Source: Ylistrum balloti (Eukaryota). From it: a stretch of DNA of 64,000 nt. Positions 146 through 60,792 of this stretch are shown piece by piece (the stretch's first letter is position 1; each line of letters opens with the position of its first letter). Made by a program: the position numbers and the translations under genes. A model generated the notes under the pieces. It was not told the origin of the DNA. It saw only the letters and a program-made list of their open reading frames with translations, and made no database searches. The stretch lies in NCBI RefSeq assembly GCF_031769215.1, contig NW_026782072.1, forward strand, positions 744,001-808,000. Reading direction: 5' to 3'.

Positions 146-655
146 ATGAGCTTTTGTGTATATAAATGCCATACTATGAGCTTTTGTGTATATAAATGCC
201 ATACTATGAGCTTTTGTGTATATAAATGCCATACTATGAGCTTTTGTGTATATAAATGACATACTATGAGCTTTTGTGTATATAAATGCCATACTATGAG
301 CTTTTGTGTATATAAATGACATACTATGAGCTTTTGTGTATATAAATGCCATACTATGAGCTTTTGTGTATATAAATGCCATACTATGAGCTTTTGTGTA
401 TATAAATGCCATACTATGAGCTTTTGAGCTTTTGTGTATATAAATGCCATACTATGAGCTTTTGTGTATATAAATGCCATACTATGAGCTTTTGTGTATA
501 TAAATGCCATACTATGAGCTTTTGTGTATATAAATGCCATACTATGAGCTTTTGTGTATATAAATGCCATACTATGAGCTTTTGTGTATATAAATGCCAT
601 ACTATGAGCTTTTGTGTATATAAATGCCATACTATGAGCTTTTGTGTGTATGTAA
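146..655. repeat. 30-bp minisatellite (atgagcttttgtgtatataaatgccatact), about 17 copies, in an androglobin intron
   Basis: Near-identical 30-bp units read directly; one short stutter at ~421; degenerate copies at 1-140. Explains ORFs 143..412, 406..735 and 414..749. Confidence 0.97.
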
Positions 656-2183
656 ATGTCAGCTCTGATATTTTATACATAAGGGTCATAATCTCATTAT
701 TATTTCCATTCCTTGTAGTTTGTAAAACTATTTGATATATAATGCTCATGTAATGTTTTAGACATCTAATTTAATTAGAAAACACTGTTTTAGTTCAAAC
801 TTTCAGTTTCGCATCTTTTTAGCAAATATCAATAATTTCTCACACACTTTCCTAGTCATATAAAAGTTTATATTCACATGAGTCATGCTTCAGGCTATTT
901 GATGATAATTTCTCTGTCAGTTTTCTTTGAAGAAAAATAAATACTTGCATGCATCTTCAATAAAACTTAGATTATATTTGTTTTTTATCAGTAAGCTTCA
1001 AACCACCTCCAAATGAAGACAGTAAGTGACTGTACATATAGTGATCGTACTAGGTGTTTTGTAGTCTTATATGAAGGTAAAAAAAGACCTTTAACTCAAT
1101 ATTGGTGAGCACAGTGCAATGGGGATTTATCTTAAGGTAGCAGAAGATGTTATATTTCTGTATACCCCATATTATGTATTATACTACTAAATATTAATTT
1201 TATATTATTTAGAATACAAGTGTTTTTAGATTTGTATTTTTAATTTTTTTACAAGGTATTAGAATTAATTAGCTGATGTACATGTATTCATATACCTAGA
1301 TACACAAGTATATATTTATCAATTTGTTTAGTGTATCAACATTTAACTTGGGAAGAAGGATTATCTTTAAGCTTGAGGTTATGGTGCATGCTTTACAAGT
1401 AAAATCACACATCCAGTATGATCACTGTCTGTGTATGTGTGATCAATCGAGCAACACTTCCACAGATGTGATTGGCTAGTAAGACTGGCCAATGGGTGCC
1501 CACGACACGCTTAAGTGTTGCACAACTTGACTGGACTATGTAATCTGACATGTTGGTACCCTATCACAATGCACTCAACACAATTTATCACCACAGCATG
1601 TATCACTCAGACATAAGTTTCTGACTTACATATCCAGTTCAGTTCATAATCGTTTTTATATTTGTGTGTGTAAAAACAAATTTCTGTAGAAATATGTTTT
1701 CAATTTTTTTTCAGTTGCATTTTAATTGCAAATAACTGTTTAAGTTTACCTAAAATATCTGTTTATTTTGGGGAGGATTAAAACTCTGTAAGCAGATATT
1801 TTTGATGGCTTGGTTGAAAGTTTTATTTTTCATTTACTTTTATATTTGATATGAATTTTGCACACGATATAGTTTATCTTATTTCAGATTGTCTTGTGGT
1901 TTTTCGTAGAACTTGAGAACTTTATCTTTTTGTATCAAGTTGGTGATATCTTCTTGTATTGATCATGATTTTACTTTTGTAACATAATCTTACTATTTGT
2001 CCCTTTGATATTAATGATAAGTAACTAGTTGAATCCAGCTGTTTAGTTTTTTTTGCACTTTCTTATATGTGCTTCCATCCAAAAATATACATTTTAGGTA
2101 AACTTTCCATGTATAACTGTTTTTGAAGATAACGATGATCAGGTGTTACTTGTGTAACTAATAAACCAGTACTTTATCTCCAG

Positions 2184-2398
2184 TTGCCAATAAAGACAGG
2201 CCACCATCTCCCCCCAAACAGGAGAAGGCTCCTGCGACATCTAGTAGCTCCCAGAAGGGAGGGAAAGGTGGAAAGACAGACAAGAAAGGAGGGAAGGACA
2301 AAGATAAGGATCAGAAGGGATCAAGACCTCCATCTCAAGCATTTGACATGACCAAGCCCCACTGGACACTACGAGTGGTCAGCGATGCCAGCTCTTTT
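2184..2398 (+). CDS. ADGB: Androglobin C-terminal region, internal exon (ANKDRPPSPPKQEK...FDMTKPHWTLRVVSDASSF)
   Basis: ctccag acceptor, gtaagt donor, ends in phase 0. KPHWTLRVVS resembles the KPYWILRLV motif that precedes KKDTERADEIRAMK in vertebrate androglobin. Confidence 0.85.
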
Positions 2399-2479
2399 GT
2401 AAGTATAGGACATACAGTGTGGTATTTTATCTGAATGCAGACTTATTTTATGGGTAATTAGTTCCTATACATGGTATAG

Positions 2480-3592
2480 CCATGTAATCAGGCAGATAGG
2501 ATGGTACAAAACTATTTAATGAGGAAGATGGTACATAAACCATGTAATCAGGCAGATAGGATGGTACAAAACTATTTAATGAGGTAGATGGTACATAAAC
2601 CATGTAATCAGGCAGATAGGATGGTACAAAACTATTTAATGAGGTAGATGGTACATAAACCATGTGACCAGGCAGATGGGATGGTACAAAACTATTTAAT
2701 GAGGTAAATGGTACACCAACCATGTAATCAGGCAGACGGAATGGTACAAAACTATTTAATGAGGTAGATGGTACACCAACCATGTAATCAGGCAGACGGA
2801 ATGGTACAAAACTATTTAATGAGGTAAATGGTACACCAACCATGTAATCAGGCAGACGGAATGGTACAAAACTATTTAATGAGGTAGATGGTACACCAAC
2901 CATGTAATCAGGCAGACGGAATGGTACAAAACTATTTAATGAGGTAGATGGTACATAAACCATGTGATCAGGCAGACGGAATGGTACAAAACTATTTAAT
3001 GAGGTAAATGGTACACCAACCATGTAATCAGGCAGACGGAATGGTACAAAACTATTTAATGAGGTAGATGGTACATAAACCATGTGACCAGGCAGATGGG
3101 ATGGTACAAAACTATTTAATGAGGTAAATGGTACACCAACCATGTAATCAGGCAGACGGAATGGTACAAAACTATTTAATGAGGTAGATGGTACACCAAC
3201 CATGTAATCAGGCAGACGGAATGGTACAAAACTATTTAATGAGGTAAATGGTACACCAACCATGTAATCAGGCAGACGGAATGGTACAAAACTATTTAAT
3301 GAGGTAGATGGTACACCAACCATGTAATCAGGCAGACGGAATGGTACAAAACTGTTTAATGAGGTAAATGGTACACCAACCATGTAATCAGGCAGACGGA
3401 ATGGTACAAAACTATTTAATGAGGTAAATGGTACACCAACCATGTAATCAGGCAGACGGAATGGTACAAAACTATTTAATGAGGTAAATGGTACACCAAC
3501 CGTGTAATCAGGCAGACGGAATGGTACAAAACTATTTAATGAGGTAAATGGTACACCAACCATGTAATCAGGCAGACGGAATGGTACAAAAC
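2480..3592. repeat. 60-bp minisatellite, about 19 copies, intronic
   Basis: Unit ccatgtaatcaggcagacggaatggtacaaaactatttaatgaggtagatggtacaccaa repeats in register with the 60-nt lines. The 371-aa minus-strand ORF is its read-through. Confidence 0.98.
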
Positions 3593-3792: not shown

Positions 3793-3888
3793 GAGGACAT
3801 TGAGGTGAAAAAGGACACAGAGCGTGCTGATGAGATACGAGCCATGAAGAAAGCATGGGAGAATGCTGAGCCAGGCCGAGCTGCCAAG
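3793..3888 (+). CDS. ADGB: Androglobin exon (EDIEVKKDTERADEIRAMKKAWENAEPGRAAK)
   Basis: AG/GT boundaries, phase 0/0. KKDTERADEIRAMKxAWExxEPGRA is the conserved androglobin C-terminal motif as recalled from the vertebrate protein. Confidence 0.93.
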
Positions 3889-4042
3889 GTATGGATTGAT
3901 TTTTGTTGGGCTGTTCTGTAATAACTGAGTTTACAAAAAATAAAGATTGAAATTGTATAGAAATGCATCTTAGAAGAAAATGGAAAGCATGTAAATTGTA
4001 GATTTAAAGCAGAATTACATATGCTCCCATTGACCATTTCAG

Positions 4043-4278
4043 GCTCTCCAGTCTCGCCTCAAGTACCTAAACACTCACCTGATCAAACTTCACCCAGACA
4101 AGGATGAAGAAGAGGTGAAGGAAGGTGAAGAAAAACCCGAGTCAGAGGCAGAGATCCCACCCCCTCAGACCCCTCTCTCTATGCATGAAGACAAGGAGGA
4201 GATTCTCACCCTGGAGCCACCACCACCACCCACACCCAAAGAGATCCTTCCTCCTTTGGATATCACTCCCTTCCTCAG
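4043..4278 (+). CDS. ADGB: Androglobin exon (ALQSRLKYLNTHLIK...LPPLDITPFLR)
   Basis: catttcag acceptor, gtcagt donor, phase 0/2; frame continuous with both neighbours. Confidence 0.88.
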
Positions 4279-4520
4279 GTCAGTTTATACCTGGGTAACC
4301 TTCCCCTATACCCAAACAAACCCAAACAGACATTCCTTCTGTGGGATGTCACTCAATTCCTCAGGTCAGTATGTACCTGGGTAATCTTCCCCTATACCCA
4401 AACAAACCCCGAACAGACATTCCTTCCCTGTTCCTCAGAACGATGTACGCTATAATATTCTCAGGAAGATTTAGTGTCATTATGGCAACAAGTTTCTAAA
4501 CAGAAGAAAATATTTTACAG

Positions 4521-4704
4521 GAAGGCGAATGGAGAGCCACGATACCTGGATGAAGATGAGATCCAGCGGCGAGAGGAAGAGAACAAACGACAGGTGGAAG
4601 AGTACAAGGCCTTCAGGGAACAAGTGAAGAATTGGAGGGAACAAGATAAACTGATGAGGAACAACATCAAGATCAAACAGCTGGAGCAGTGTGAGGACCT
4701 ACAG
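4521..4704 (+). CDS. ADGB: Androglobin exon, coiled-coil (KANGEPRYLDEDEIQRREEENK...LEQCEDLQ)
   Basis: ttttacag acceptor, gtgggt donor, phase 2/0; the split codon AG+G gives Arg. Confidence 0.9.
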
Positions 4705-5349
4705 GTGGGTGTGGTCGTTATAACATGTCTACTAGGTGTTCTTTATTCTCCACACAATCCTTGATCCTCTAGACTTTTATCTTCTCATGAAATACCCTTA
4801 ATAACAATCACTTGAGTTTTAAAGCTAGGTACACTGCCTGTTTGCTGTGAGAGGAACAACTTATTTATTTAATAGCTAGAAATAGTTCTTTTTTGCCATG
4901 ATATCGTGTATTTTATTCTTTAATTTGCTGTTTTTATATATGTGTCCTATAATTCTGGTTATTAATCTACAGCTTGCAGATTTATTTTCAGACAAGAAAT
5001 GTTTCTAGTGCAAAATATAAAATCACTGAAGTTAATTGTGCTGATTATTCATCCTAGTAAATAGTTTATGTAGTTAGATTAGGCCTTGGATGTGTGGATT
5101 TCTAGCTAGTGACTTACTAAAGTCAAGAGATCGGTCTTGTTTCTGTATACATGGAAAAGTATGCATGTGGAAAATTTACACTAAATACACAAAAGTCATT
5201 CGGCTGAATAAATTTTACCCACATGCATTAATTTGTGACGCATTATGTACATATACCGGTAGGTCCACTGATTGTATAAATAACCCCCACCTATGTATGC
5301 CTGTCTAAATTGCAAAAATTGAGCCCCTTAAGAAACAACCATATTCACA

Positions 5350-5600
5350 GTAGTTAGGATTTCTAGCTTGTGACTTACAAAAGTCACAGGATAGAGTCTT
5401 GTTGATTTGGGTTTCTAGCTAGTGACTAAAAGAAGTTGAGGGATGGAGTCACGTTAGTTTGGAGTTCTAGCGAGTGACTTTAAATAATTCAGAGGATGGA
5501 GTCACGTTAGTTTGGATTTCTAGCCAATGACTTAAAAGAATTCAAAGGATGGAGTCACGTTAGTTTGGGTTCCTAGCCAGTGACTTAAAGAAGTCGAGGG
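5350..5600. repeat. Degenerate 53-bp tandem repeat (ggatggagtcacgttagtttgg..ctagc..gtgactt)
   Basis: Core recurs at 5441, 5494 and 5547; a related copy lies near 5090-5140. Confidence 0.8.
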
Positions 5601-6087
5601 AGAACACAGGCTTACACAGCTGTCAAATAAGAACACTTGTTTTGTACACTACTTTTTACAATTCACTTAGATCTGGATCGACTCTTTAACTGTAGTCTGT
5701 CAGGGTCACTGTAAACATAGCAGTAAGTTATCTTAATCTAAAGTCTTTTTTTATTGTTACTTGCTTATCAATATTTCAAACATGTATATCAGTGCTATTT
5801 CTGTGAATATATCTAACCACAATCATGGTTAGAAAAATTTGTGTCTATAATGATAAAGAAATGTTTACTGCAAATATACTTTGGAATGTTGAATCTAAAA
5901 CAGATTGGTAGAAACACTATTATGCAGATATTTATCTCAGGTCTTGGGTTTGGTAATTGAAAACTTTGTTTTGTCATTAGAAATTTTTCATGATAGCAGG
6001 AACTTGCTTTAGTTCTGTTTAGATTCTGTGTGCTGTGCTTTTCTTCAAATAATCTCTTCCTTGTTTTTTACTCCTTTTCCATTCTAG

Positions 6088-6189
6088 GAATGTCTTGACG
6101 ATGAAAGAGATGCCTTTCAACTTGCTCGTGAACAATATCGACAGAAATTTATTATACAGAGAAAACGCAGCAAATTGTCTGCCAAGTAG
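6088..6189 (+). CDS. ADGB: Putative alternative terminal exon of androglobin (ECLDDERDAFQLAREQYRQKFIIQRKRSKLSAK*)
   Basis: Long pyrimidine tract ending ttctag; phase 0 matches the 4704 donor; 10 of 27 ungapped identities to the start of the 7496 exon; AATAAA at 6873. Confidence 0.7.
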   Translation, partial: ECLDDERDAFQLAREQYRQKFIIQRKRSKLSAK

Positions 6190-7495
6190 AAATTGTTAGT
6201 TTGTGTATGATATTATAGCGGACATGAAACCAGGTCTAACAGAGATAATCTTAAGTATCTCTCATCAGACTTAGTGTAGTTTGCTTGTAGATTTAGATAT
6301 GGTGAGAGTTTGTGTGAATTCAAATTTCGGGCGTTTTGAGACTGGATAGTTTTCATTTTTGGTGGATGTGTTAATCATGTTTTAATTTGGGCATTGGAAA
6401 GTTATTTTACATTTCAGTGTTTGATGTTTTTTATTTTTTTGTTTTTTTTTTAATTACATGATTTACTGGTGAATATGGTATAACAACATGATAATATGTA
6501 CATATTCATGTTTTTTTATCACATCAAAAGAAAGTATAACCAGGTTATAAAGTTACCATTAGGATTCTGATAAATTGTGTCCTTGGTCTGTTTGAGTGCC
6601 TCCCCTTTAACAACTCCTTCACGTTTTACTAACATCTTTTTATGTTTTGTTTTACAGATTCACATGCCACTGTATTTACATGAGTAGATATACAGCATGT
6701 TTCACATTTTGTCTAGCAGGCTTCTGTTATTGTAATGTACACATGTTGATAACAGTTATACTTTTGTTACTCTGGGCTTCTGTACTTCACAGTAGCGTAG
6801 CAGCATGTGTACATTCATTAATGTTAATACATATGTACAATGTGTTCCTCTGAGAATCATTTTAATGTATCAAATAAATTTAAAGAACTTTATCATAAAG
6901 AGACAGCATGCATTTTTTTCTGAAAAGAAAATTGTTTTATTGTTAAGATAAAAGTCGTGCTGAAATAATTCCTTAGTCAAGCTATATCTCAATGGAGCTC
7001 ATTGTTAATGTATTTCATTGTTCTTCAAAGCCATGACGATATAGTTTCAGTTTATGCTGATCCTGAACACAGAATTGAAATATGAAATATTGGATATGTA
7101 ACACACTTTAAAGAGGAACTTCTGAAAAATTACTTTATATACAATAGACAACAGGTGTTTATGGAAAAATAAATCAAAATATAAATTTGAATGAATGTTG
7201 TATTAAACAAACAGAATACAGAAAGACATGCAGTATCTATAATGTATAATTTTACCTTTAATATACTTACAAAGGAAAAAATGAAAAACCATGTTTATTT
7301 TTCCATTTTTTCCCTTCAGTTTTCCAGATAAAGAAAACAGCTTATATTTGCCTGTAAATTACTACATAAAAAGTACTACAAAGAAATGTTGATACTGACA
7401 ATATATTTATTATCATCAGGTCTAACGTTGTATACTATCTGTGTAGGCTGTCATTGTGTTTCATACTAGGACACACTTATTTCTCTGTTGTACAG

Positions 7496-7702
7496 GCCAT
7501 GTTGGACTCTGCCAGGGAAGGAATAAATAAACCTAGAGAGGCTTTCCGACAAAAGTTCCTTGATGAAGAACGCAGGAAACAGGAAGCTGAGGCTGAGAAG
7601 GAGGCTGCAATGGCAGCAGAGGTCACCTCAAAATCACCAAAGGGTAGAAACAAGAGTGCAAAAGGAGCAAAAAGTCCAGGGGGTGGTAAAAAGAAGAAAT
7701 GA
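7496..7702 (+). CDS. ADGB: Androglobin terminal exon (AMLDSAREGINKPREAFRQKF...GGGKKKK*)
   Basis: tacag acceptor, phase 0, TGA at 7700-7702. The LDxAR...REx(F/Y)RxK segment and lysine-rich end match the androglobin C-terminus. Confidence 0.92.
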   Translation, partial: AMLDSAREGINKPREAFRQKFLDEERRKQEAEAEKEAAMAAEVTSKSPKGRNKSAKGAKSPGGGKKKK

Positions 7703-7857
7703 TGAGGACATCAAAATAGGATAAACAAATGTACTATGAGGTCTTTCATTTCAAGTAGCATTTGAAAATGTTGCTATCTTAACTAACTTATCAAAGAAAA
7801 AGGGATTTCATTCAGCTGTTGTGTGTCTTTCTTTATTGATCTTTCAATCAGATTATA

Positions 7858-8296
7858 TTGTGTACACTGACTGTACATCTCTCTGTGGACATTAATAGTA
7901 CATCTTGTTGTACTTTGTACACTGACTGTACATCTCGCTGCGTACACTGACTGTACATCTCTCTGCGTACACAGACTGTAAATCTCACTGTGTACACTGA
8001 CTGTAAATTTCTCTGTGTACATTTACTGTACATCTCGCTGTGTACACTGACTGTACATCTCACTGTGTATACTGACTGTACATTTCTCTGTGTACATTTA
8101 CTGTACATCTCGCTGTGTACATTGACTGTACATCTCTCTGTGTACACAGACTGTACATTTCTCTGTGTACATTACTGTACATCTCTGTGTACACAGACTG
8201 TACATTTCCCTGTGTACACAGACTGTACATCTCACTGTGTACACTGACTGTACATCTCTCTGTGTACACTGACTGTACATCTCTCTGTGCACACTG
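7858..8296. repeat. 25-bp minisatellite (tgtacactgactgtacatctctctg) just after the androglobin stop codon
   Basis: Tandem units with small variants; explains ORFs between 7783 and 8297. Confidence 0.93.
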
Positions 8297-9769
8297 AGCC
8301 TACATCTACCTGTATATGCTGATTGACAACTTTTGGGTAGTGTTACCCTATACCTTAGATAAGAAACTGCAGCAGTTGTTTGAAAACAAATGATATTTAA
8401 ATATATGTATTATATGCATATCTGTGATAAACGCACAAAGTGCAGTTTAATAAATTCACTGTACATATGAATGTTTAATATATTAAAGAAATGTTTTGTT
8501 CACTTGACCAAATCAAGCATGAAAATGCCCTACCAATAAAAAACATATCAGTTGTATCATACAACAGTGAATTCTAGCCCAGGTGTAGATTGTGTCCTAT
8601 AGCTGATAAACTGACTGTTGTGAGGCTTTTGGTAATTCTATTGACTTCACCTTCATATGGCTTATGTATAAACAATCCTTTTGACTGCTATTGTAGATAT
8701 GGCTTATGTATCAACATTCCTTTTTACTGCTATTTAAGATATGCATAAATATGTATTATATAGAATAAATGCATATTACAAGTGCTGTGTTATTTTTACA
8801 CCTCAAGTGTTACTTCTTCTTTTAGCTGACTGACATAATAATTACTTTTATTCATTTTACATTTTAAATTATATATTGATGATGATATAATCCGTGGAAT
8901 ATATTTAAGGCATTGAATACTTCTTTTAACTAAATGTATTGCTGGAAATCTGTTCTTTACATTTTAGATATAATAGATATCAAAATGGTTTGTTGACCAT
9001 AATTAAAAACGTCTCAGTTTTTATTCCAATGTATATCCAAAGTTGATGATACACAGTTAATTGTCCGAGATCAATCCGTCCTTCCACTGGTTCAAACCGA
9101 TCACAAGTGGCCCTTACGTAATGTCCGTCCTGCCCCGTATACATGTCTCGTCACTGTTGTCACCTACATGTTGTCAATGTATCTTTATGTGGAAGAAGAT
9201 TTTTGCATCGTCAAATTATATTTTTGTAGGATGTTCAATTTCATTCCACCTTCTACTCAAATAAATAATCTTTTTTATATCTTTCTTTTTGTTGTATTAC
9301 AGAAATGGGATGCAAGCTTCTAGTACAAAACTATTTTCCACTTTGTGAAATTGATAATAATTTATACAAAAAAAAGCTTCTGGTTTTCTCTGTTTGTTTA
9401 TTACTTAACACATTTTGAATATGTTTAACATTAATGAGTTTACTGTTTTTAGAAATAGGGATATCTTCATATTGTCACAGATGTTGTAGAAACATTTCTA
9501 TATAAAATCTACACACAGGTTTACACTGCATCAGGTCAAAACCTCTGTCTCTATGCCACAACAAAGTTTTATTATATTTGTAAAAAAAAATATTCATATA
9601 TCTGTTGACAGCAATGTACCATAAAAAGTCTACAATAAATTATTAAATGTGTCAAAACATTATCTTTGTTTTTATTCAAGTACTTTTACTTGATATTGTT
9701 GGTTTCAAATTACAGTTAATTAACCGTTATTGACAAGATAAGGCTAAATACACATTATATCATGCCATT

Positions 9770-26422: not shown

Positions 26423-28553
26423 GTGATGATGAAGAGATGCCAAGTCCAAAGAAGGGGCGAGTCACTCGAGCTGTTGTGCAACAGGAGGAGGCACCATCTC
26501 GTGGGAGGGCAGGTAGTCGCAAAGCTGCAGAACAAAAAAAACCTGCCCCTTCACCAACTCAGAAAAGTCGTTCTAGCTCTCGTCAAAAAACTGCTCCTAC
26601 ACCAACCAAGACAGAGCAACCAAAGGCAGAAACTTCAAGGTCACGTAGTAGGTCTAAGGCAGCAAAACCTGAACCCAAAACACCAGAGCCCAAACCAGCC
26701 AAGTCTAAAAGCCAACCCAAGAGCCAAACCAAAAAAACACCAGCTAAAAAAGCAACGCCTGTAACTGTAGCCAAACCTAATTCTTCACCAAAGTCTACTG
26801 GTACAAGAAGCAGTAGCAGGGGCAAGAAGGAGGAAAAGGCAAGTGACATGCCATCTGCACAAATTATTCTCACCAAGATTGATAGTCCTAGCAAATCTAA
26901 CAATACAAAGTTAAAAGAAGTAACATCACCCTCTGCAAGTAGAGGTCGTTCATCTGCAAAATCCTCACCTCAAAAGGCCAGTCCAAAAGCATCTAGAAGA
27001 TCAAAATCCACTGAGAAATCTACTCCTCCAGCTCGACGTGGTAGAAAGTCTGCTGAGGCAGAAGAGAAAGTTGAAGATGCTGAAAAAGATGAAGGCAAAG
27101 AAGTCATTACAGAAAATGAAAAAGTAGAGACGACCAAGGATGAAGAAACTGTAGAAGAATCAGCTGTGTCTGAGGAGGCAACTAAAGATGAAGGTATGGA
27201 TACAGAAGATGATACAGCAGAAGTAGAGGATAAGGTAGAGGAGAAAGAAAGCAATGATGTAAATGAAAAAGAAAATGAAATTGAGAAGGAAAATGAAGTA
27301 GAAGAAGAGGAGGAAGAAATGAAGGATGAGGAAATGAAGGATGAAGAAGTAAAGGACAAAGAGTCGAAAGAAGAAGTTAAAGATGAAATGGAGGGAGAAA
27401 CTGAAGTAAATAAAGAAGAAAACGAAGTGAAAAATGAAGAAAATGAATCTTGCACTAAACCAGAGGAAAGTGTTGAGGAAGAAATGGAAAAGGAGGAAGT
27501 GGATAAGAAGGAGCCTTGTGAACCAGAAAAGGAGGAACCTTCAGTAGAAACCATACCACCTTCGGGACCTTCACCAGTAAAACAGTCAGCATCTCCAGCA
27601 ACGCAAGAATCTAAACCACCTGAAATTGAAGCAATATCTGATGATGAAGATGCGATAGAAGAGCAAAAGGATGAACCAATGGAAGAAGGTGGTGGTGAAG
27701 AACAGAAAGAAGAACAAGCAGAAGTTACACCAGCTGCTGAAGAATCAGAGGCAGCTAAAGTGGAGGCACCCCAGGAAGTTTCAGAACCTGCAACAACGGA
27801 CAGAGAGCAGCAAAACGGATCCTCAGATGATCCGCTTTCTTCTCCAACCCGCAAACGCAAGTGGGGTGAACTGGATGACAAAGAAGAGGACCTATCACCT
27901 AAAAAGGTGCGTCGGTCTATTGATATGGCTGATGTCACAAGTGAAGGAGTAGTAACGACAAATGGGGAAGATCAGGTTTCAAATCAAGAAGCAGAAGAGG
28001 AATCAATGGAAACAAATGTAGACCAGAAGGCCCTGGAATCACAAGTAGTACAAACTTCCACAGACACAGGAAATCAAGATATTGTACAGGATTATGTTGT
28101 CGTGAATATGGATGAAATACCAGCAGCTAATAGCACAGAAGTCTTACAGTGCTTACCTACAGCGAAAGAGGAGGCAACCACTGTTACAACAGCAGAACAA
28201 AGTCAGTCAGAAGTTCCTGCAGCAGAAGTGGTTTCAGATATTAATCAGGATCAAACAACAGCATCATCTCCAGTGTCGGAGGTCAATCCAGTGCTGTCCA
28301 GGAAATTTATTCCTAATCCAGCTTATCAGTCAGGGGACACTAACAAACAATTCTCGGTGGTTAGTTACAACATTTTAGCTCAGTGTCACTTAGAGAGAAA
28401 TGACTATACATTTACAGAGTCTCAGTATTTAACAGAAAGTTATCGTCATCAAAACCTTGTGAAAGAAATAGAATACCTTGGTGCAGATTTAGTGTGTATG
28501 CAGGAAGTGGGACCTCTATACTTTGAGTCCTTACTCAAACCAGCAATGTCAAA
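26423..28553 (+). CDS. EEP nuclease coding exon 3 (2131 bp): basic S/P/K/R-rich then acidic E-rich region, start of EEP domain (SYNILAQ, LVCMQEV)
   Basis: 706-aa ORF; ttaccag acceptor, aa|gtaagt donor, phase 1/2; catalytic Asn and Glu motifs present. Confidence 0.95.
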
Positions 28554-30274
28554 GTAAGTTGAATTTGTGTAAGTTCTAGGGTAGCTTTATATTGAAACAG
28601 TGACAGCTTCAAACCTTTGAATACTTCCACTGTTTTGCCACTGTGTGTCAATGTATTTTATAGCAGTTTCACAATTACATGTATATCAGTAAGCATTTAG
28701 TATTGATCAAAGTTCTGTGGCACTTGTTTGCTAAGTATTTGTTTTCAATACATATGTCTACATATGTATTATTATTCTCAAACAAGATACAAATAGATGT
28801 CAGCTTACACTATCAATTCTTAAGCTCAGAAGCAGCGTCCATTAAATACTTCAGAGACTTGATGAAAATAAGTAACCCCATTTTTTTTTTTTTTTTTGAC
28901 TATATCGTAAGGGATGACTACTAAAAGTGAAAATCCCCATAAGATTTGGGATAGCCTTAATGCTATCAAAATGGGGACACGAAAACAACCAAAATAAAAC
29001 TATTGTGCCTGACACAACCTTTGTTATCATTAATTTTCTCATTTTTTAATCCTAATTTTTATTAGCCGATCAAAAAATACTGACTTGACTTAAAGTATGG
29101 TGTTGTCATTTTTTATCTGGAGATCTCCCAGATTTTTCTACCTCTATTTTTCAACGTTGGTATGCTTAATAGCCTTGACATGAAGTTGTGTTATTTGATT
29201 CAATTGTATTTTATAAGTTACTGCCCCTTGTTTTCTTATTTTGTAATCTTATCTGGAGATCTTTCTCTTGTTTTTTCAGTTGTCTTTTTTTTTTCAAATA
29301 AGGTATGCTTAATCACATGACATGAAGTTGTTTTCCTACACAGCAGTTTGATTCAGCAATGGTTGAAGGTGTTAATTGCTCTTTGCTTTTTTAGCATTTT
29401 AATTTTGTATTGATATCTTTTCCAATCTTTCACAAATTTCTCTCAAAATTGGTAGGTTTTATACTATTTCACGAGATGGTGTTCTTATGAACAGTATTTT
29501 GATTCAATGATATTTCAAAAAGTTATTGCCCTTTAATTTTTTTTGAAGCATTGAAATCTTGTCAAAATAATAATTCTTCATCCTTTTTATTAAAACTTGT
29601 ATTTTTGATGTATCATTCTTTGGCATGGGACGGGATGGGTGTATACTGTTCCATCTCACAGTACATTGTACTTGTGTAATGCTGTACTTGATATAGTGAA
29701 ACTCTGATTTTCATACACTCATCAAAAATTTTGACAGGATGTATTATGGTATGGTGTGTCAATTCATTATCTCTCGGTCATAAACTTTCATTTGTCTGTA
29801 GATCTTTCAACTGCTTGTTTTCCCTCTTGACATTTTAACTTACTATTGCCATCCCCATATTTGTGATTTTCATTACAACAAATCCTGAATATTTCTTTGA
29901 TATGGGATGAGTCTGTACTGTTCCGCCATGCAGTAATCTTGTCCTTAGTGATTATACTGTGTCTGCTCAAGTGAGGGCGGTTTTGATTTTTTATCAGTAT
30001 TCTTTGACTGTATCTGTCTACCATGCCTGGATTATGATGTTTTATAGTGTTACAGGACATATAGCAGCCTCTGAGTGGTACTGTTATTTGTGAACACCAT
30101 ATCTTATATTGTCTTGTTTGAGGGAACTCAACATTTTCCTGTATACAGTTATAATAGTAATTGGTAGTTTGTTAACATATAGTGTAATGTAAGAACGCCC
30201 TATCACTATTCACAAATCTTGTATATATGTTGTCTATCAAAATGATATTTGCAATTTGTTGATTTTGTGAACAG

Positions 30275-43861: not shown

Positions 43862-44103
43862 NNNNNNNNNNNNNNNNNNNNNNNNNNNNNNNNNNNNNNN
43901 NNNNNNNNNNNNNNNNNNNNNNNNNNNNNNNNNNNNNNNNNNNNNNNNNNNNNNNNNNNNNNNNNNNNNNNNNNNNNNNNNNNNNNNNNNNNNNNNNNNN
44001 NNNNNNNNNNNNNNNNNNNNNNNNNNNNNNNNNNNNNNNNNNNNNNNNNNNNNNNNNNNNNNNNNNNNNNNNNNNNNNNNNNNNNNNNNNNNNNNNNNNN
44101 NNN
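43862..44103. other. Assembly gap (242 N)
   Basis: Run of N. Confidence 1.
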
Positions 44104-46031: not shown

Positions 46032-46523
46032 TTAAAAGTTTGAAGTAACTGTAATTGTTGGACCTACCTGTAACTGAGACTGGCGGAAATTAAAGTCTTC
46101 CTGGTTTCCGGGGACATGGAGTGTGTTGTTAAGGCTATTTTCATACCAGCCACACAAATCTTGACGTTCCGTAAGAATGTTTTCATTGACGTCAGATCGG
46201 AATGAGGTAGTTGGTGACGTCTCGTCCAGTATGTCAGCTAAGACTCTAATGTAGCGTGCCGCGCCGTAAAGAATTCCAACTTTCGATGCACGATCACTAG
46301 TCTCTCCAATGAACGGGACATGTTTCCTTAACAGTTGAAAAGCGTCGTTCATGGCCTCGACTCTCTTGCGTTCCCGTGTGTTCCGGTGAAGAACATACTC
46401 CGGGGATCTCTGCGAGTGAGGAACATGGCGTCTTTTGCGTGTCTTATTTTTCAGTTTAGGAAATGAAAACTGGCATGATCCGAATAGAGAACTATCAAAC
46501 ATATTCTGTAATGTATTGACCAT
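46032..46523 (-). CDS. Group A bHLH transcription factor, achaete-scute-like (divergent)
   Basis: RNTRERKRVEAMNDAFQLLRKHVP...SKVGILYGAARYIRVL. The RNxRERxRV basic region is closest to the ASC family. May splice at 46068 instead of reading to the stop at 46032. Confidence 0.88.
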   Translation of the reverse strand: MVNTLQNMFDSSLFGSCQFSFPKLKNKTRKRRHVPHSQRSPEYVLHRNTRERKRVEAMNDAFQLLRKHVPFIGETSDRASKVGILYGAARYIRVLADILDETSPTTSFRSDVNENILTERQDLCGWYENSLNNTLHVPGNQEDFNFRQSQLQVGPTITVTSNF

Positions 46524-54009: not shown

Positions 54010-55873
54010 TTTTAAAATCTTTTATTAAAATCAACTTCACTAATTACATACACACGCTAAACAATTACATTACAGTAAAACATACACAAACCATATATTG
54101 CATAACATTCACCAATGACACATTATACAAAATACGGAGTGAAAAACGTGATAAATCTGATACAATGTAAATAAAGCTTTGATCACCTTTGATTAAGGGA
54201 TTATCCGAAAGGAAATATTTCATAAATAGCTTTCTACGATCTTTACGCTGATAGTAAAATTTTGCATACTCAAAATATCTTGTAATAGTATATTTTACAA
54301 ACTTTAAAATATCAACATTGCGAAGATCATTATTGTATAAATTTCGCCTTTTAAATATGCGAAACCGAACAATGCCGAAAAAGAAATTAATGAAATAACA
54401 ATTACATTTTTAAATTTTTCTAGTAAATCCTAACAATAAAACTGTGTTAACTGATATATCTCTGGTATCTGACGGATAAACACAAGATAATAATTTAACA
54501 AGAACTCCTTCAAGAAAAATAAATAATTCACCAAGGTCTCAACAGTTAAGAAATAAATGCTGAAGCGTTTCAGTATATACATTACACACAGGACAAACAT
54601 CACTTGTAACTTTACCAATTTTCAATAATTTATCCATTGAAAAAATAGAATTATGGGCAACTTTGAAATGCAGTTCTATACAATCTGGTGGGAAGCATGG
54701 CACATACATAATTGAAAAAACGTCTTTTAACGCCACATTGGGGCAAAATTCTGACCAAAATTCTGTTGATGTTGGACACTTAAATTTCGATTTAATAAAA
54801 AGGTTATAAAAGTCTCGAGTATTTACAGGAACAATTTTACGTCTACCACCAGTTTTAGTTGGTATTTCAACAAAGGCTCCGATAGCACTTTGCGCCCTAG
54901 CAGGTGTATAAACATTAGATAAAACAATAACTTTATACTCTCGCGAAATAGCTTTCATAACGAGATTATAACTTAATAGGATTACACGGGTTGATATGTC
55001 AGGATCAATTTCATGAATAATATCTACAATTGCGCGGAAGGGAAGAAAATTAGGCAAGACTTCATATGTCAAATCTTTGATTTTAGTTATTCCAGCCTTA
55101 GCAAATGCAGGAGAAAATACCGTTTTTTCACCATTTGTAATATTGGGATTAAAGAACAATGGCTGCTCATAAACAAATGATGGGCGATTATTATCAAATT
55201 TAACATGATAGCATTTTCGAAATTCTGACCACGCCATCAACATTTCTCGATATACACAAGGTAAGCTTTTCAATTGCTTATTCCTAAAATCACAATATAT
55301 GGTCCCAAAGCCCAAATTCATTCCTTCTATAGAATTGAAAAAATACAAACATGTACTCTTCCATATCGCCTTACATTCCGAGTCAAGCCATCTCATTAAA
55401 AACTTCAACCGAAATGATTGGCGCTTTAAGATAATATCAGGCATATTTAAGCCACCATCTTGTTTTTTACCAATTACCGTGTCATATTTAATCAGATGAG
55501 CACCATTCCATAAAAACTTAACACACATATTTTTAACTTCATTAATAGTATCATCAGGTATAGTCTGGGACATCAATGTATACCAACACCTTGACAGTAA
55601 CAAACTTTCAACAACAGTTGCTCTGCCTTGTATTGTTAACTTTCTTTGTAACCACATATTCAATATAGACTTCATTGACTTTACCTTTACATTCCAATTT
55701 AATTCATTACATAGTTTGTCGTTTTCACCTATATACACACCAAGAACACATATAACTTCTTTGCACAATTTTACCCCTAACTCATTCATTTCGTTTTCAA
55801 AAAAGGAACCAGTTCCACAATATAACAATTCTGATTTTTCCTTATTAATTTTTGCCCCAGATCCATTACTATA
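54010..55873 (-). mobile_element. 5'-truncated non-LTR retrotransposon (L1/Tx1-like), copy 1, inserted in tRNA-iMet
   Basis: ORF 54539..55903 carries the end of RT (SGAKINKEKS), the GGLNMPD motif and a zf-RVT motif (CPVC..ETLQHLFLNC). AATAAA plus short A tail at 54010. 18-bp TSD at 53992-54009 / 55874-55891. Nonsense TGA at 54539. Confidence 0.92.
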
Positions 55874-55909
55874 TATGGGACCAGCACGCTTCCACTGCGC
55901 CATTCTGCT
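55874..55909 (-). pseudogene. 5' part (nt 1-36) of a LINE-interrupted tRNA-iMet
   Basis: tatgggaccagcacgcttccactgcgccattctgct; two substitutions versus the intact genes. Confidence 0.92.
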
Positions 55910-58931: not shown

Positions 58932-60792
58932 TTTTAAAATCTTTTATTAAAATCAACTTCACTAATTACATACACACGCTAAACAATTACATTACAGTAA
59001 AACATACACAAACCATATATTGCATAACATTCACCAATGACACATTATACAAAATACGGAGTGAAAAACGTGATAAATCTGATACAATGTAAATAAAGCT
59101 TTGATCACCTTTGATTAAGGGATTATCCGAAAGGAAATATTTCATAAATAGCTTTCTACGATCTTTACGCTGATAGTAAAATTTTGCATACTCAAAATAT
59201 CTTGTAATAGTATATTTTACAAACTTTAAAATATCAACATTGCGAAGATCATTATTGTATAAATTTCGCCTTTTAAATATGCGAAACCGAACAATGCCGA
59301 AAAAGAAATTAATGAAATAACAATTACATTTTTAAATTTTTCTAGTAAATCCTAACAATAAAACTGTGTTAACTGATATATCTCTGGTATCTGACGGATA
59401 AACACAAGATAACAATTTAACAAGAACTCCTTCAAGAAAAATAAATAATTCACCAAGGTCTCGACAGTTAAGAAATAAATGCTGAAGCGTTTCAGTATAT
59501 ACATTACACACAGGACAAACATCACTTGTAACTTTACCAATTTTCAATAATTTATCCATTGAAAAAATAGAATTATGGGCAACTTTGAAATGCAGTTCTA
59601 TACAATCTGGTGGGAAGCATGGCACATACATAATTGAAAAAACGTCTTTTAACGCCACATTGGGGCAAAATTCTGACCAAAATTCTGTTGATGTTGGACA
59701 CTTAAATTTCGATTTAATAAAAAGGTTATAAAAGTCTCGAGTATTTACAGGAACAATTTTACGTCTACCACCAGTTTTAGTTGGTATTTCAACAAAGGCT
59801 CCGATAGCACTTTGCGCCCTAGCAGGTGTATAAACATTAGATAAAACAATAACTTTATACTCTCGCGAAATAGCTTTCATAACGAGATTATAATTTAATA
59901 GGATTACACGGGTTGATATGTCAGGATCAATTTCATGAATAATATCTACAATTGCGCGGAAGGGAAGAAAATTAGGCAAGACTTCATATGTCAAATCTTT
60001 GATTTTAGTTATTCCAGCCTTAGCAAATGCAGGAGAAAATACCGTTTTTTCACCATTTGTAATATTGGGATTAAGAACAATGGCTGCTCATAAACAAATG
60101 ATGGGCGATTATTATCAAATTTAACATGATAGCATTTTCGAAATTCTGACCACGCCATCAACATTTCTCGATATACACAAGGTAAGCTTTTCAATTGCTT
60201 ATTCCTAAAATCACAATATATGGTCCCAAAGCCCAAATTCATTCCTTCTATAGAATTGAAAAAATACAAACATGTACTCTTCCATATCGCCTTACATTCC
60301 GAGTCAAGCCATCTCATTAAAAACTTCAACCGAAATGATTGGCGCTTTAAGATAATATCAGGCATATTTAAGCCACCATCTTGTTTTTTACCAATTACCG
60401 TGTCATATTTAATCAGATGAGCACCATTCCATAAAAACTTAACACACATATTTTTAACTTCATTAATAGTATCATCAGGTATAGTCTGGGACATCAATGT
60501 ATACCAACACCTTGACAGTAACAAACTTTCAACAACAGTTGCTCTGCCTTGTATTGTTAACTTTCTTTGTAACCATATTCAATATAGACTTCATTGACTT
60601 TACCTTTACATTCCAATTTAATTCATTACATAGTTTGTCGTTTTCACCTATATACACACCAAGAACACATATAACTTCTTTGCACAATTTTACCCCTAAC
60701 TCATTCATTTCGTTTTCAAAAAAGGAACCAGTTCCACAATATAACAATTCTGATTTTTCCTTATTAATTTTTGCCCCAGATCCATTACTATA
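58932..60792 (-). mobile_element. 5'-truncated L1/Tx1-like LINE, copy 2, inserted in tRNA-iMet
   Basis: Near-identical to copy 1 with the same ends. Private 2-bp (~60575) and 1-bp (~60072) deletions break the ORF into 60529..60822, 60009..60524 and 59332..59994; CGA is retained where copy 1 has TGA. Confidence 0.92.

What the first reader, a model, noticed from the sequence alone, without database searches (positions are those of the whole stretch)
6088..6189. Androglobin appears to have two homologous, mutually exclusive terminal exons
Seen: inside the last intron is a phase-0 exon with a strong pyrimidine tract. It encodes ECLDDERDAFQLAREQYRQKFIIQRKR, which aligns without gaps to AMLDSAREGINKPREAFRQKFLDEERR of the 7496 exon (10/27 identical, plus E/D, I/F, F/Y, L/I, R/K), while the DNA has diverged strongly. 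Inference: an old exon duplication kept by selection. It would give a short isoform ending ...KRSKLSAK and lacking the long basic tail and terminal KKKK. I am not aware of such an isoform for androglobin, a ciliary/spermatogenic calpain-globin chimera.
Basis: partly seen in the sequence, partly recalled or inferred. Interest (0 to 1): 0.7.

Follow-up and report, generated by a model that had tools for sequence, protein, structure and literature searches.

The report
Stop-carrying duplicated cassette exon in androglobin
The scallop androglobin gene has a real extra exon, an old copy of the start of its last exon, which carries a stop codon and gives a shorter protein tail; it is spliced in as an internal cassette rather than used as a second terminal exon, and oyster annotations already show the same isoform.

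Summary
6088-6189 is a phase-0 ORF behind a strong acceptor. Its first 27 residues match the start of the last coding exon (7496) at 10/27 identity and BLOSUM62 score 52; the next best of 26,961 stop-free 27-mers in the window scores 23.

The exon is real and conserved. Oyster loci (L011, Ostrea-like; L014, Crassostrea-like) carry an orthologous exon at the same place. It is 86% identical in DNA inside an intron that is otherwise unalignable (46%).

A full-length androglobin mRNA contig of a related scallop (L018) joins the penultimate exon to this exon, and this exon to the last exon. The junctions correspond to window 4704|6088 and 6194|7496.

So the exon is a 107-nt stop-containing cassette with donor ATT|GTTAGT at 6195. 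It is not an alternative terminal exon with its own poly(A) site. Inclusion replaces the 68-residue tail, including its conserved Lys-rich end, with 33 residues ending KRSKLSAK.

Selection acts on both tails between the two scallops: omega is 0.10 for the cassette and 0.02 for the last exon.

The isoform is already in RefSeq for Ostrea edulis (XP_056013791.1) and Crassostrea virginica (XP_078322765.1). No RNA data exist here for the window species itself. Interest is modest.

The parts
2182..2399 (+). Upstream androglobin coding exon (approximate ends)
   Evidence: Aligns at 88% with L018 mRNA 4610-4827. ORF ...DKKGGKDKDKDQKGSRPPSQAFDMTKPHWTLRVVSDASS.
3793..3888 (+). Androglobin coding exon (EDIEVKKDTERADEIRAMKKAWENAEPGRAAK)
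   Evidence: Acceptor cag|G at 3793 and donor AAG|gtatgg at 3889. 91% identical to L018 4827-4928.
4043..4278 (+). Androglobin coding exon ending ...PKEILPPLDITPFL(R)
   Evidence: Acceptor tttcag|G at 4043 and donor CTCAG|gtcagt at 4279. 86% identical to L018 4921-5159.
4521..4704 (+). Penultimate coding exon (184 nt) encoding part of the long C-terminal helix
   Evidence: Acceptor ttttacag|G and donor CTACAG|gtgggt. 89% identical to L018 5159-5342. 74-77% aa identity to oyster ORFs whose upstream neighbours hit PF22069 and PF22070.
6058..6087 (+). Polypyrimidine tract and AG acceptor of the cassette exon
   Evidence: tccttgttttttactccttttccattctag|. The equivalent 50 nt are 72% conserved between the two oyster loci, against 46% for the rest of the intron.
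6088..6194 (+). Cassette exon, 107 nt: 33 codons (6088-6186), stop TAG 6187-6189, then 5 nt
   Evidence: L018 mRNA 5343-5452 aligns here at 90% and is flanked by the penultimate and last exons. L017 shows the same upstream junction. Reciprocal best match with the oyster exons. Omega 0.10 against L018.
6195..6200 (+). 5' splice donor of the cassette (ATT|GTTAGT)
   Evidence: The L018 junction reads ...TAGAAATT|GCGATGTTGGAC, which equals window 6194|7496. A GT lies exactly 5 nt after the stop in L011 and L014 as well.
7496..7702 (+). Last coding exon: canonical 68-residue tail plus stop; becomes 3'UTR when the cassette is included
   Evidence: Acceptor ttgtacag|G. 86% identical to L018 5453-5681. 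Omega 0.02. The canonical junction is seen in about 100 annotated mollusc androglobins.
7703..8517 (+). 3'UTR of the gene (extent approximate)
   Evidence: L018 aligns to 7703-7724 and again to 8412-8517. AATAAA at 8449 and 8535.

Best explanation
The window holds the 3' end of the androglobin gene of a pectinid scallop. It is not Pecten maximus or Mizuhopecten yessoensis.

The segment 6088-6194 is a 107-nt alternatively spliced cassette exon lying between the penultimate coding exon (4521-4704) and the last coding exon (7496-7702). It arose from an old tandem duplication of the 5' part of the last exon, before scallops and oysters split.

When the cassette is skipped, the protein ends with the canonical 68 residues. 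The first 45 or so continue the long C-terminal helix. The last 23 (SKSPKGRNKSAKGAKSPGGGKKKK) are disordered, strongly basic and conserved across molluscs.

When the cassette is included, translation reads 33 cassette codons and stops at TAG, 5 nt before the last exon junction. The helix is then about 13 residues shorter and of different sequence, the basic tail is missing, and the last exon serves as 3'UTR.

Shown here: the homology of the two exons; conservation of the exon in oysters; both splice junctions in a related scallop's mRNA; purifying selection on both tails.

Inferred: that the window species splices the same way; that both isoforms occur in one animal; and that the switch changes how androglobin docks or is regulated in cilia and sperm flagella by removing the basic tail.
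For: Gene identity:
- Oyster contigs carrying the orthologous penultimate exon have upstream ORFs that hit PF22069 and PF22070.
- L018 encodes a 1773-residue protein with Peptidase_C2 and Androglobin_II, IV and V domains.
- The nearest named proteins are the Pecten maximus and Mizuhopecten yessoensis androglobins.

Homology of the two exons:
- BLOSUM62 score 52 against a next best of 23 in the window.
- Profile-profile P = 3e-5, aligned in register.
- DNA matches fall on codon positions 1 and 2 only.

Conservation:
- The window exon and the L011/L014 exons are reciprocal best matches, each starting right at an AG (scores 31 and 25; next best 7 to 18).
- Between L011 and L014 the first 66 nt of the exon are 86.4% identical without gaps. 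The constitutive exons are 84-85% identical and the intron 46%.

Transcripts:
- L018 (Logan, SRR19746222, 6093 nt) joins penultimate exon, cassette and last exon at the equivalents of 4704|6088 and 6194|7496.
- L017 (ENA ERZ14224630) is 99.5% identical to L018 and shows the same first junction.
- RefSeq XP_056013791.1 (Ostrea edulis) and XP_078322765.1 (Crassostrea virginica) end with the orthologous tail.

Selection, window against L018:
- Cassette: 6 synonymous and 3 non-synonymous differences, omega 0.10.
- Last exon: omega 0.02.

Structure, single-sequence AlphaFold2:
- With the cassette tail, the helix runs through residue 32 of the 34-residue tail, with block-mean pLDDT of 96-97 over most of the tail, falling to 88 and then 62 at its end.
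- With the canonical tail, the helix covers the first 45 residues and the last 23 are disordered.
Against: - There is no RNA evidence for the window species itself. The only run holding the stretch (X1) is genomic DNA with no joints.
- The skipped and included forms were seen in different species: inclusion in the L018 scallop, skipping in the P. maximus and M. yessoensis models. Co-occurrence in one animal is therefore inferred.
- L018 and L017 may derive from related samples.
- In oysters the peptide is weakly constrained (omega 0.5-0.8) while synonymous sites are unusually conserved. There the RNA-level or early-termination role may matter more than the tail sequence.
- Only 15 of the 50 members of the cluster holding the P. 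maximus and M. yessoensis isoforms could be inspected, and all were canonical.
- The functional meaning of the basic tail is unknown.
Confidence: 0.85

Rival explanations
1. Alternative terminal exon. Transcripts spliced 4704 to 6088 run on unspliced and are polyadenylated after the AATAAA at 6873, so the two homologous exons never share a transcript.
For: AATAAA is present at 6873, about 680 nt after the stop. The donor GTTAGT is not perfect. Nothing in the window species' own RNA was available to exclude this. It could coexist with cassette use.
Against: The only full transcript found, L018, splices the exon on to the last exon. L017 ends ...AAATTGCG, which matches that junction and not the window's intron sequence AAATTGTTAG. 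A GT exactly 5 nt after the stop is kept in all three genomic loci (window, L011, L014). The conserved island in oysters ends just after that GT. L011 has no AATAAA or ATTAAA between the exon and the last exon.
Confidence: 0.1
2. Regulatory 'poison-like' exon. Inclusion mainly serves to lower output of the canonical protein or to change the 3'UTR, and the encoded tail has no function of its own.
For: Between Ostrea-like and Crassostrea-like loci the peptide evolves fast (omega 0.5-0.8). Synonymous divergence there is far below that of neighbouring exons (dS 0.25-0.56 against 1.8-2.0). This pattern points to constraint on the RNA. The tails differ in length among species (33, 34, 34 and 38 residues).
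Against: Between the two scallops the tail is under clear purifying selection (omega 0.10; 31 of 33 residues kept with 6 synonymous changes). L3, D4, R7, L12, A13 and R18 are invariant from scallops to oysters. The stop lies only 5 nt before the last junction, a position that in the mammalian EJC model does not trigger decay (general knowledge, not tested here).
Confidence: 0.15
3. Constitutive exon in scallops. All scallop androglobin ends with the short tail, and the old last exon is now only 3'UTR.
For: The one full-length scallop mRNA contig recovered (L018) is the inclusion form.
Against: The last exon's reading frame is kept between the window and L018 at omega 0.02, with dS 0.97. All 14 inspected RefSeq isoforms of P. 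maximus and M. yessoensis join the penultimate exon directly to the last exon.
Confidence: 0.04
4. A chance ORF or decaying duplicate that is never spliced in this species.
For: No RNA data exist for the window species.
Against: The ORF, acceptor and donor are all intact. No differences fall in 6088-6189 in a second individual (X1), although the whole 3.4-kb region shows only 18. The exon is 90% identical to the expressed exon of L018, with mostly synonymous changes.
Confidence: 0.03

Closest known systems
RefSeq androglobin-like isoform X9 of Ostrea edulis (XP_056013791.1) and isoform X11 of Crassostrea virginica (XP_078322765.1)
   Same: Both join the penultimate exon (...CEELQ) to the orthologous exon and end early. 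The tails are DCLDKDRHLISLAYQTIRANHQVNGPPTTQSGVLEQPT and DRLDQHRHLVALAYQSIRAKHLVEGSGLTPSGVP. They share L3, D4, R7, L12, A13 and R18 with the window's tail.
   Different: Only about 24% identical to the scallop tail, and 34-38 residues long instead of 33. These are automatic models. Whether the exon is internal in their mRNAs could not be read here.
Tandem-duplicated mutually exclusive exons
   Same: Two adjacent homologous exons in the same phase, derived from a tandem exon duplication, give alternative versions of one protein segment.
   Different: Here the upstream copy carries a stop and is 107 nt (3n+2). The downstream copy is the last exon. Both are present in the same mRNA (L018). Exclusion happens at translation, not at splicing.
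Alternative last exons with their own poly(A) sites
   Same: The outcome for the protein is the same: two alternative C-termini.
   Different: The exon has a used 5' donor and is followed by the normal last exon and its 3'UTR in the transcript.
Canonical androglobin C-terminus (long conserved helix described in PMC13331133; C-terminal coiled-coil domain deleted in PMC9249397)
   Same: The penultimate exon and both tails are predicted to form one long helix. This fits the 'C-terminal long helix' reported as structurally conserved (PMC13331133).
   Different: The papers found do not describe alternative C-termini. The only mention of isoforms is as possible annotation artefacts.

Membership tests
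Androglobin (ADGB) gene | Orthology to proteins with calpain-like Peptidase_C2 plus Androglobin_II/IV/V domains | tested here: met
   Window exons are 86-91% identical in DNA to L018 mRNA, whose 1773-residue product hits PF00648, PF22068, PF22069 and PF22070. The closest named proteins are the Pecten maximus and Mizuhopecten yessoensis androglobins. The window's own C-terminal exons have no Pfam hit.
Androglobin (ADGB) gene | Permuted globin domain with IQ motif | not testable with these tools
   That part of the gene lies upstream of the window. Orthologues P0118 and P0119 carry PF00042.
Mutually exclusive exon pair from tandem duplication | The two exons are adjacent and homologous | tested here: met
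   10/27 identity, score 52 against a next best of 23. hhalign P = 3e-5, in register.
Mutually exclusive exon pair from tandem duplication | The two exons never occur in the same mature mRNA | tested here: not met
   L018 mRNA contains the cassette followed by the last exon.
Alternative last (terminal) exon | The exon ends at its own poly(A) site and its 3' side is not spliced | tested here: not met
   In the related scallop the exon is spliced at the equivalent of 6194|7496. This could not be tested in the window species itself.
Stop-containing alternative cassette exon (alternative C-terminus) | Bounded by AG and GT and found between the flanking exons in mRNA | tested here: met
   AG at 6086-6087 and GT at 6195-6196. 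Both junctions are present in L018, and the upstream one in L017.
Stop-containing alternative cassette exon (alternative C-terminus) | In-frame stop inside the exon | tested here: met
   TAG at 6187-6189. A stop is present in L018, L011 and L014. No in-frame donor lies before the stop in the window.
Stop-containing alternative cassette exon (alternative C-terminus) | Both inclusion and skipping occur (the exon is truly alternative) | tested here: inconclusive
   Inclusion is seen in L018, L017 and the oyster isoforms X9 and X11. Skipping is seen in all other inspected scallop and oyster isoforms and in Logan oyster mRNAs P0139-P0142. For oysters both forms occur within one species' annotation. 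For the window species there are no data.
Stop-containing alternative cassette exon (alternative C-terminus) | Sensitivity or insensitivity of the inclusion mRNA to nonsense-mediated decay | not testable with these tools
   Only the geometry is known: the stop lies 5 nt upstream of the last junction.

The most novel reading that the evidence does not exclude
An exon duplication older than the scallop-oyster split, hundreds of millions of years by general knowledge, created a stop-carrying cassette. It has been kept ever since as a switch that removes the deeply conserved Lys-rich tail (KSPKG.K.SAKG.KSP...KKKK) and shortens the terminal helix of androglobin. Androglobin is reported in Tetrahymena as a component of the ciliary central-apparatus C1b projection (PMC8175508). 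The two isoforms would then dock or be regulated differently in sperm flagella and in gill or larval cilia.
Probability: 0.35. Interest if true: 0.5.

Novelty: new member of a known kind. Interest (0 to 1): 0.3.

Why it matters
Little is known about how androglobin works beyond its roles in spermatogenesis and in cilia. Its long C-terminal helix is the part conserved even outside animals (PMC13331133).

A naturally occurring, selected pair of C-termini in bivalves marks the last 25-70 residues as a functional module that evolution toggles. That gives a simple handle: compare the localisation and partners of the two tails.

For annotation, the result corrects the model. The exon is an internal, stop-carrying cassette and not a second terminal exon. 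The result also links scattered automatic isoform models in oysters with an unannotated scallop exon as one conserved event.

The mechanism itself, an alternative C-terminus from a duplicated exon, is ordinary.

Tried and rejected
- RNA evidence for the window species. The look-up of sequencing runs returned a single run (X1). When laid on 4400-7800 it proved to be genomic contigs with continuous intron cover and no joints.
- Pfam scan of the six exon peptides found nothing.
- Earlier findings of the scan: nothing near the site, and the word 'androglobin' occurs in no finding.
- blastn of the window's last intron against relatives aligns only the constitutive exons; the cassette is too short and too diverged for DNA search.
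- Heterodont-like clam loci L015 and L016 have complete short last introns (797 and 533 nt) with no match above noise (best scores 8-13). The exon is absent or unrecognisable there.
- Mytilid contigs L019 and L020 stop before the last exon and show no convincing match, so this is inconclusive.
- Genomic DNA of Pecten maximus and Mizuhopecten yessoensis could not be fetched. Two products were not on record, and the gene range of the third (112 kb) was too long.
- An in-frame 66-nt cassette in oysters, using the conserved CAG|GTG, was considered. The RefSeq Ostrea model reads through that site, so it remains only a possibility.
- Literature searches found no description of an alternative androglobin C-terminus in molluscs.

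Full report
**1. The observation**

- A pyrimidine-rich tract ends in AG at 6086-6087.
- From 6088 a phase-0 frame reads ECLDDERDAFQLAREQYRQKFIIQRKRSKLSAK, then TAG at 6187-6189.
- The preceding coding exon ends at 4704 (CTACAG|gtgggt).
- The last coding exon begins at 7496 (AMLDSAREGINKPREAFRQKFLDEERR...GGGKKKK, stop at 7700-7702).

The ungapped 27-residue alignment has 10 identities and a BLOSUM62 score of 52. I scored every stop-free 27-mer in all six frames of the 64-kb window against the start of the last exon. There were 26,961 of them, with mean -27 and sd 11. Apart from the last exon itself, the top hit is 6088, and the next best scores 23.

At the DNA level the two exon starts share 34 of 81 bases. 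Matches fall on codon positions 1 and 2 (12 and 16 of 27) and are at chance level on position 3 (6 of 27). The similarity is real, and it is in register with both acceptors.

**2. The gene and the organism**

The C-terminal exons have no Pfam hit of their own. A word search with the penultimate exon (window 4522-4704) found genomic ORFs 74-77% identical. On their contigs the upstream ORFs hit PF22069 Androglobin_IV and PF22070 Androglobin_V.

A search with the C-terminal region of the scallop protein P0109 named the closest proteins as androglobin of Pecten maximus and Mizuhopecten yessoensis. Next come oysters, mussels, clams and gastropods.

The window's penultimate exon differs by two or three residues from each of the two named scallops. 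The window is therefore from another pectinid. By their peptides:
- L011-L013 are Ostrea-like.
- L001-L010 and L014 are Crassostrea-like (gigas/angulata type).
- L015 and L016 resemble heterodont clams.

**3. The exon is conserved in oysters**

L011 and L014 contain the whole last intron. tblastn with the window's 33-residue peptide hit one place inside each intron:
- L011 1266-1331, DCLDKDRHLISLAYQTIRANHQ
- L014 765-830, DRLDQDRQLIALAYQAIRAKHQ

Each starts directly after a pyrimidine tract and AG.

Scanning every stop-free 22-mer of each intron on both strands shows these are reciprocal best matches with window 6088. Scores are 31 and 25, and the next best are 7 to 18.

A global alignment of the L011 and L014 introns is at the level of unrelated sequence: 46% identity with many gaps. 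The figures for the exon region stand out:

| Segment (L011 vs L014) | DNA identity |
|---|---|
| First 66 nt of the exon | 86.4%, no gap |
| Constitutive exons | 84-85% |
| 50 nt before the exon | 72% |
| 51 nt after the first 66 | 67%, no gap |
| Rest of the intron | 46% |

Both oyster frames run on to a TGA at the same position, giving 38 codons. In all three genomic loci a GT lies exactly 5 nt after the stop:
- window: TAG AAATT GTTAGT
- L011: TGA CCACT GTACAA
- L014: TGA ACATT GTACAT

The two heterodont-like loci have short complete introns with nothing comparable. The mytilid contigs were too short to decide.

**4. Transcripts show what the exon is**

No RNA run holds the window's stretch. 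The single holder, X1, is genomic DNA.

A profile search with the penultimate exon over the representative library found P0009. This 189-residue product has the penultimate exon followed directly by EDLDDERDAFQLAREQYRQKFIIQRKRSKISSAK. Its 644-nt contig L017 (ENA ERZ14224630) is intron-less. It aligns at 86-90% to window exons 3793-3893, 4041-4279, 4518-4705 and 6086-6195.

The same 90% cluster holds P0109, a 1773-residue protein on a 6093-nt Logan contig, L018 (SRR19746222). L018 is a full-length androglobin mRNA. It aligns to the window as follows:

| L018 | Window | Exon |
|---|---|---|
| 5156-5343 | 4518-4705 | penultimate |
| 5341-5453 | 6086-6195 | cassette |
| 5453-5681 | 7496-7724 | last |
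| 5967-6075 | 8412-8517 | 3'UTR |

The junction reads ...GCCAAGTAGAAATT|GCGATGTTGGAC. The exon is therefore an internal cassette. In window terms it is 6088-6194 (107 nt), with donor ATT|GTTAGT at 6195. The canonical last exon follows as untranslated sequence. L017 is 99.5% identical to L018, and its last bases (AAATTGCG) fit the same junction.

In the window no in-frame donor lies before the stop. Any inclusion therefore ends the protein at ...KRSKLSAK.

**5. The isoform is already annotated in oysters**

Among the cluster members I could list, two end with the orthologous tail:
- XP_056013791.1, androglobin-like isoform X9 of Ostrea edulis: ...CEELQ DCLDKDRHLISLAYQTIRANHQVNGPPTTQSGVLEQPT. 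This is exactly the read-through frame of L011.
- XP_078322765.1, isoform X11 of Crassostrea virginica: ...CEELQ DRLDQHRHLVALAYQSIRAKHLVEGSGLTPSGVP.

All other inspected isoforms use the canonical junction. These include 14 from P. maximus and M. yessoensis, 14 from Mytilus, and the Logan oyster mRNAs P0139-P0142.

**6. Selection**

Nei-Gojobori counts:

| Comparison | Exon | Syn / non-syn differences | dS | omega |
|---|---|---|---|---|
| Window vs L018 | penultimate | 16 / 4 | 0.80 | 0.03 |
| Window vs L018 | cassette | 6 / 3 | 0.40 | 0.10 |
| Window vs L018 | last | 23.5 / 3.5 | 0.97 | 0.02 |
| L011 vs L014 | cassette | 8 / 18 | 0.25-0.56 | 0.5-0.8 |
| L011 vs L014 | neighbouring exons | – | 1.8-2.0 | – |

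In scallops both tails are protein-coding under purifying selection, which argues that both isoforms are made. In oysters the cassette shows strong nucleotide-level conservation with a loosely constrained peptide, a pattern common for alternative exons.

Residues L3, D4, R7, L12, A13 and R18 are invariant across the five cassette peptides. L3, D4, R7 and R18 are also invariant in the last exon. The two profiles align in register with P = 3e-5.

The duplication therefore predates the scallop-oyster split.

**7. What the switch does to the protein**

These are single-sequence AlphaFold2 models, so they should be read cautiously. Both show one long helix beginning in the penultimate exon.
- With the cassette, the helix runs to residue 32 of the 34-residue tail. 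Block-mean pLDDT is 96-97 over most of the tail, falling to 88 and then 62 at its end.
- With the canonical tail, the helix covers the first 45 residues. The last 23, SKSPKGRNKSAKGAKSPGGGKKKK (net charge +10), are disordered.

That basic motif is nearly invariant from bivalves to gastropods, a brachiopod and a hemichordate.

Published work reports:
- a structurally conserved long C-terminal helix (PMC13331133);
- a 700-residue C-terminal region of unknown role that binds SEPT10 (PMC9249397);
- an androglobin homologue in the C1b projection of the ciliary central apparatus (PMC8175508).

I infer, without a test, that the cassette toggles a docking or regulatory element at the very end of the protein.

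**8. Novelty**

The papers I could search do not describe alternative androglobin C-termini. Public annotation and transcript assemblies already contain the isoform. The kind of event is ordinary.

New here are three things: the recognition that the exon is a diverged duplicate of the last exon's start, its conservation between scallops and oysters, and the corrected architecture as a cassette rather than a terminal exon.

**9. Limits**

Natural orthologous transcripts were used instead.
- The N run at 43862-44103 was left alone.

Noticed in passing
window 4234-4426: An 86-nt tandem duplication (2.2 copies, 87% match) copies the 3' end of androglobin exon 4043-4278 together with its donor. The sequence CTCAG|GTCAGT occurs at 4279 and again at 4365. 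The related scallop mRNA uses the first. Using the second would add 86 nt and shift the frame.
   Followed up: partly
window 146-651, 2480-3592, 5351-5589, 7859-8297: Minisatellites lie in androglobin introns and after its last exon: 30 nt x16.6, 60 nt x18.5, 53 nt x4.5 and 25 nt x17.5. The last one sits inside the presumed 3'UTR.
   Followed up: no
L011 1332 and L014 831: The oyster cassette has a conserved internal CAG|GTG 66 nt into the exon. Using it would give an in-frame 22-codon insertion before the canonical tail. DNA conservation drops from 86% to 67% exactly there. The RefSeq Ostrea model reads through it.
   Followed up: partly
proteins P0118-P0228: Bivalve androglobin genes carry very many RefSeq isoforms: up to X50 in Mytilus edulis, and clusters of 50-100 members. 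The P. maximus gene spans about 112 kb. Alternative splicing of this gene appears unusually rich in bivalves.
   Followed up: no
window 26437-28557 (+): A 706-residue open frame with long Lys/Ser-rich and Glu-rich low-complexity parts. It ends in a segment (…FSVVSYNILAQCHLERNDYTF…ADLVCMQEV) that from memory resembles the start of an endonuclease/exonuclease/phosphatase domain. Not searched.
   Followed up: no
window 46032-46523 (-): A 163-residue ORF containing RERKRVEAMNDAFQLLRKHVP, which from memory looks like a basic helix-loop-helix motif. Not searched.
   Followed up: no
window 54539-55903 and 59332-60524 (-): Two nearly identical ORF copies sharing long identical peptide stretches. This is probably the 3' part of a repeated retroelement. 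Not searched.
   Followed up: no
L016 3726-4775 (-): A transposase ORF (DDE_3 / Transposase_1 hits) sits inside an androglobin intron of the heterodont-like clam locus.
   Followed up: no
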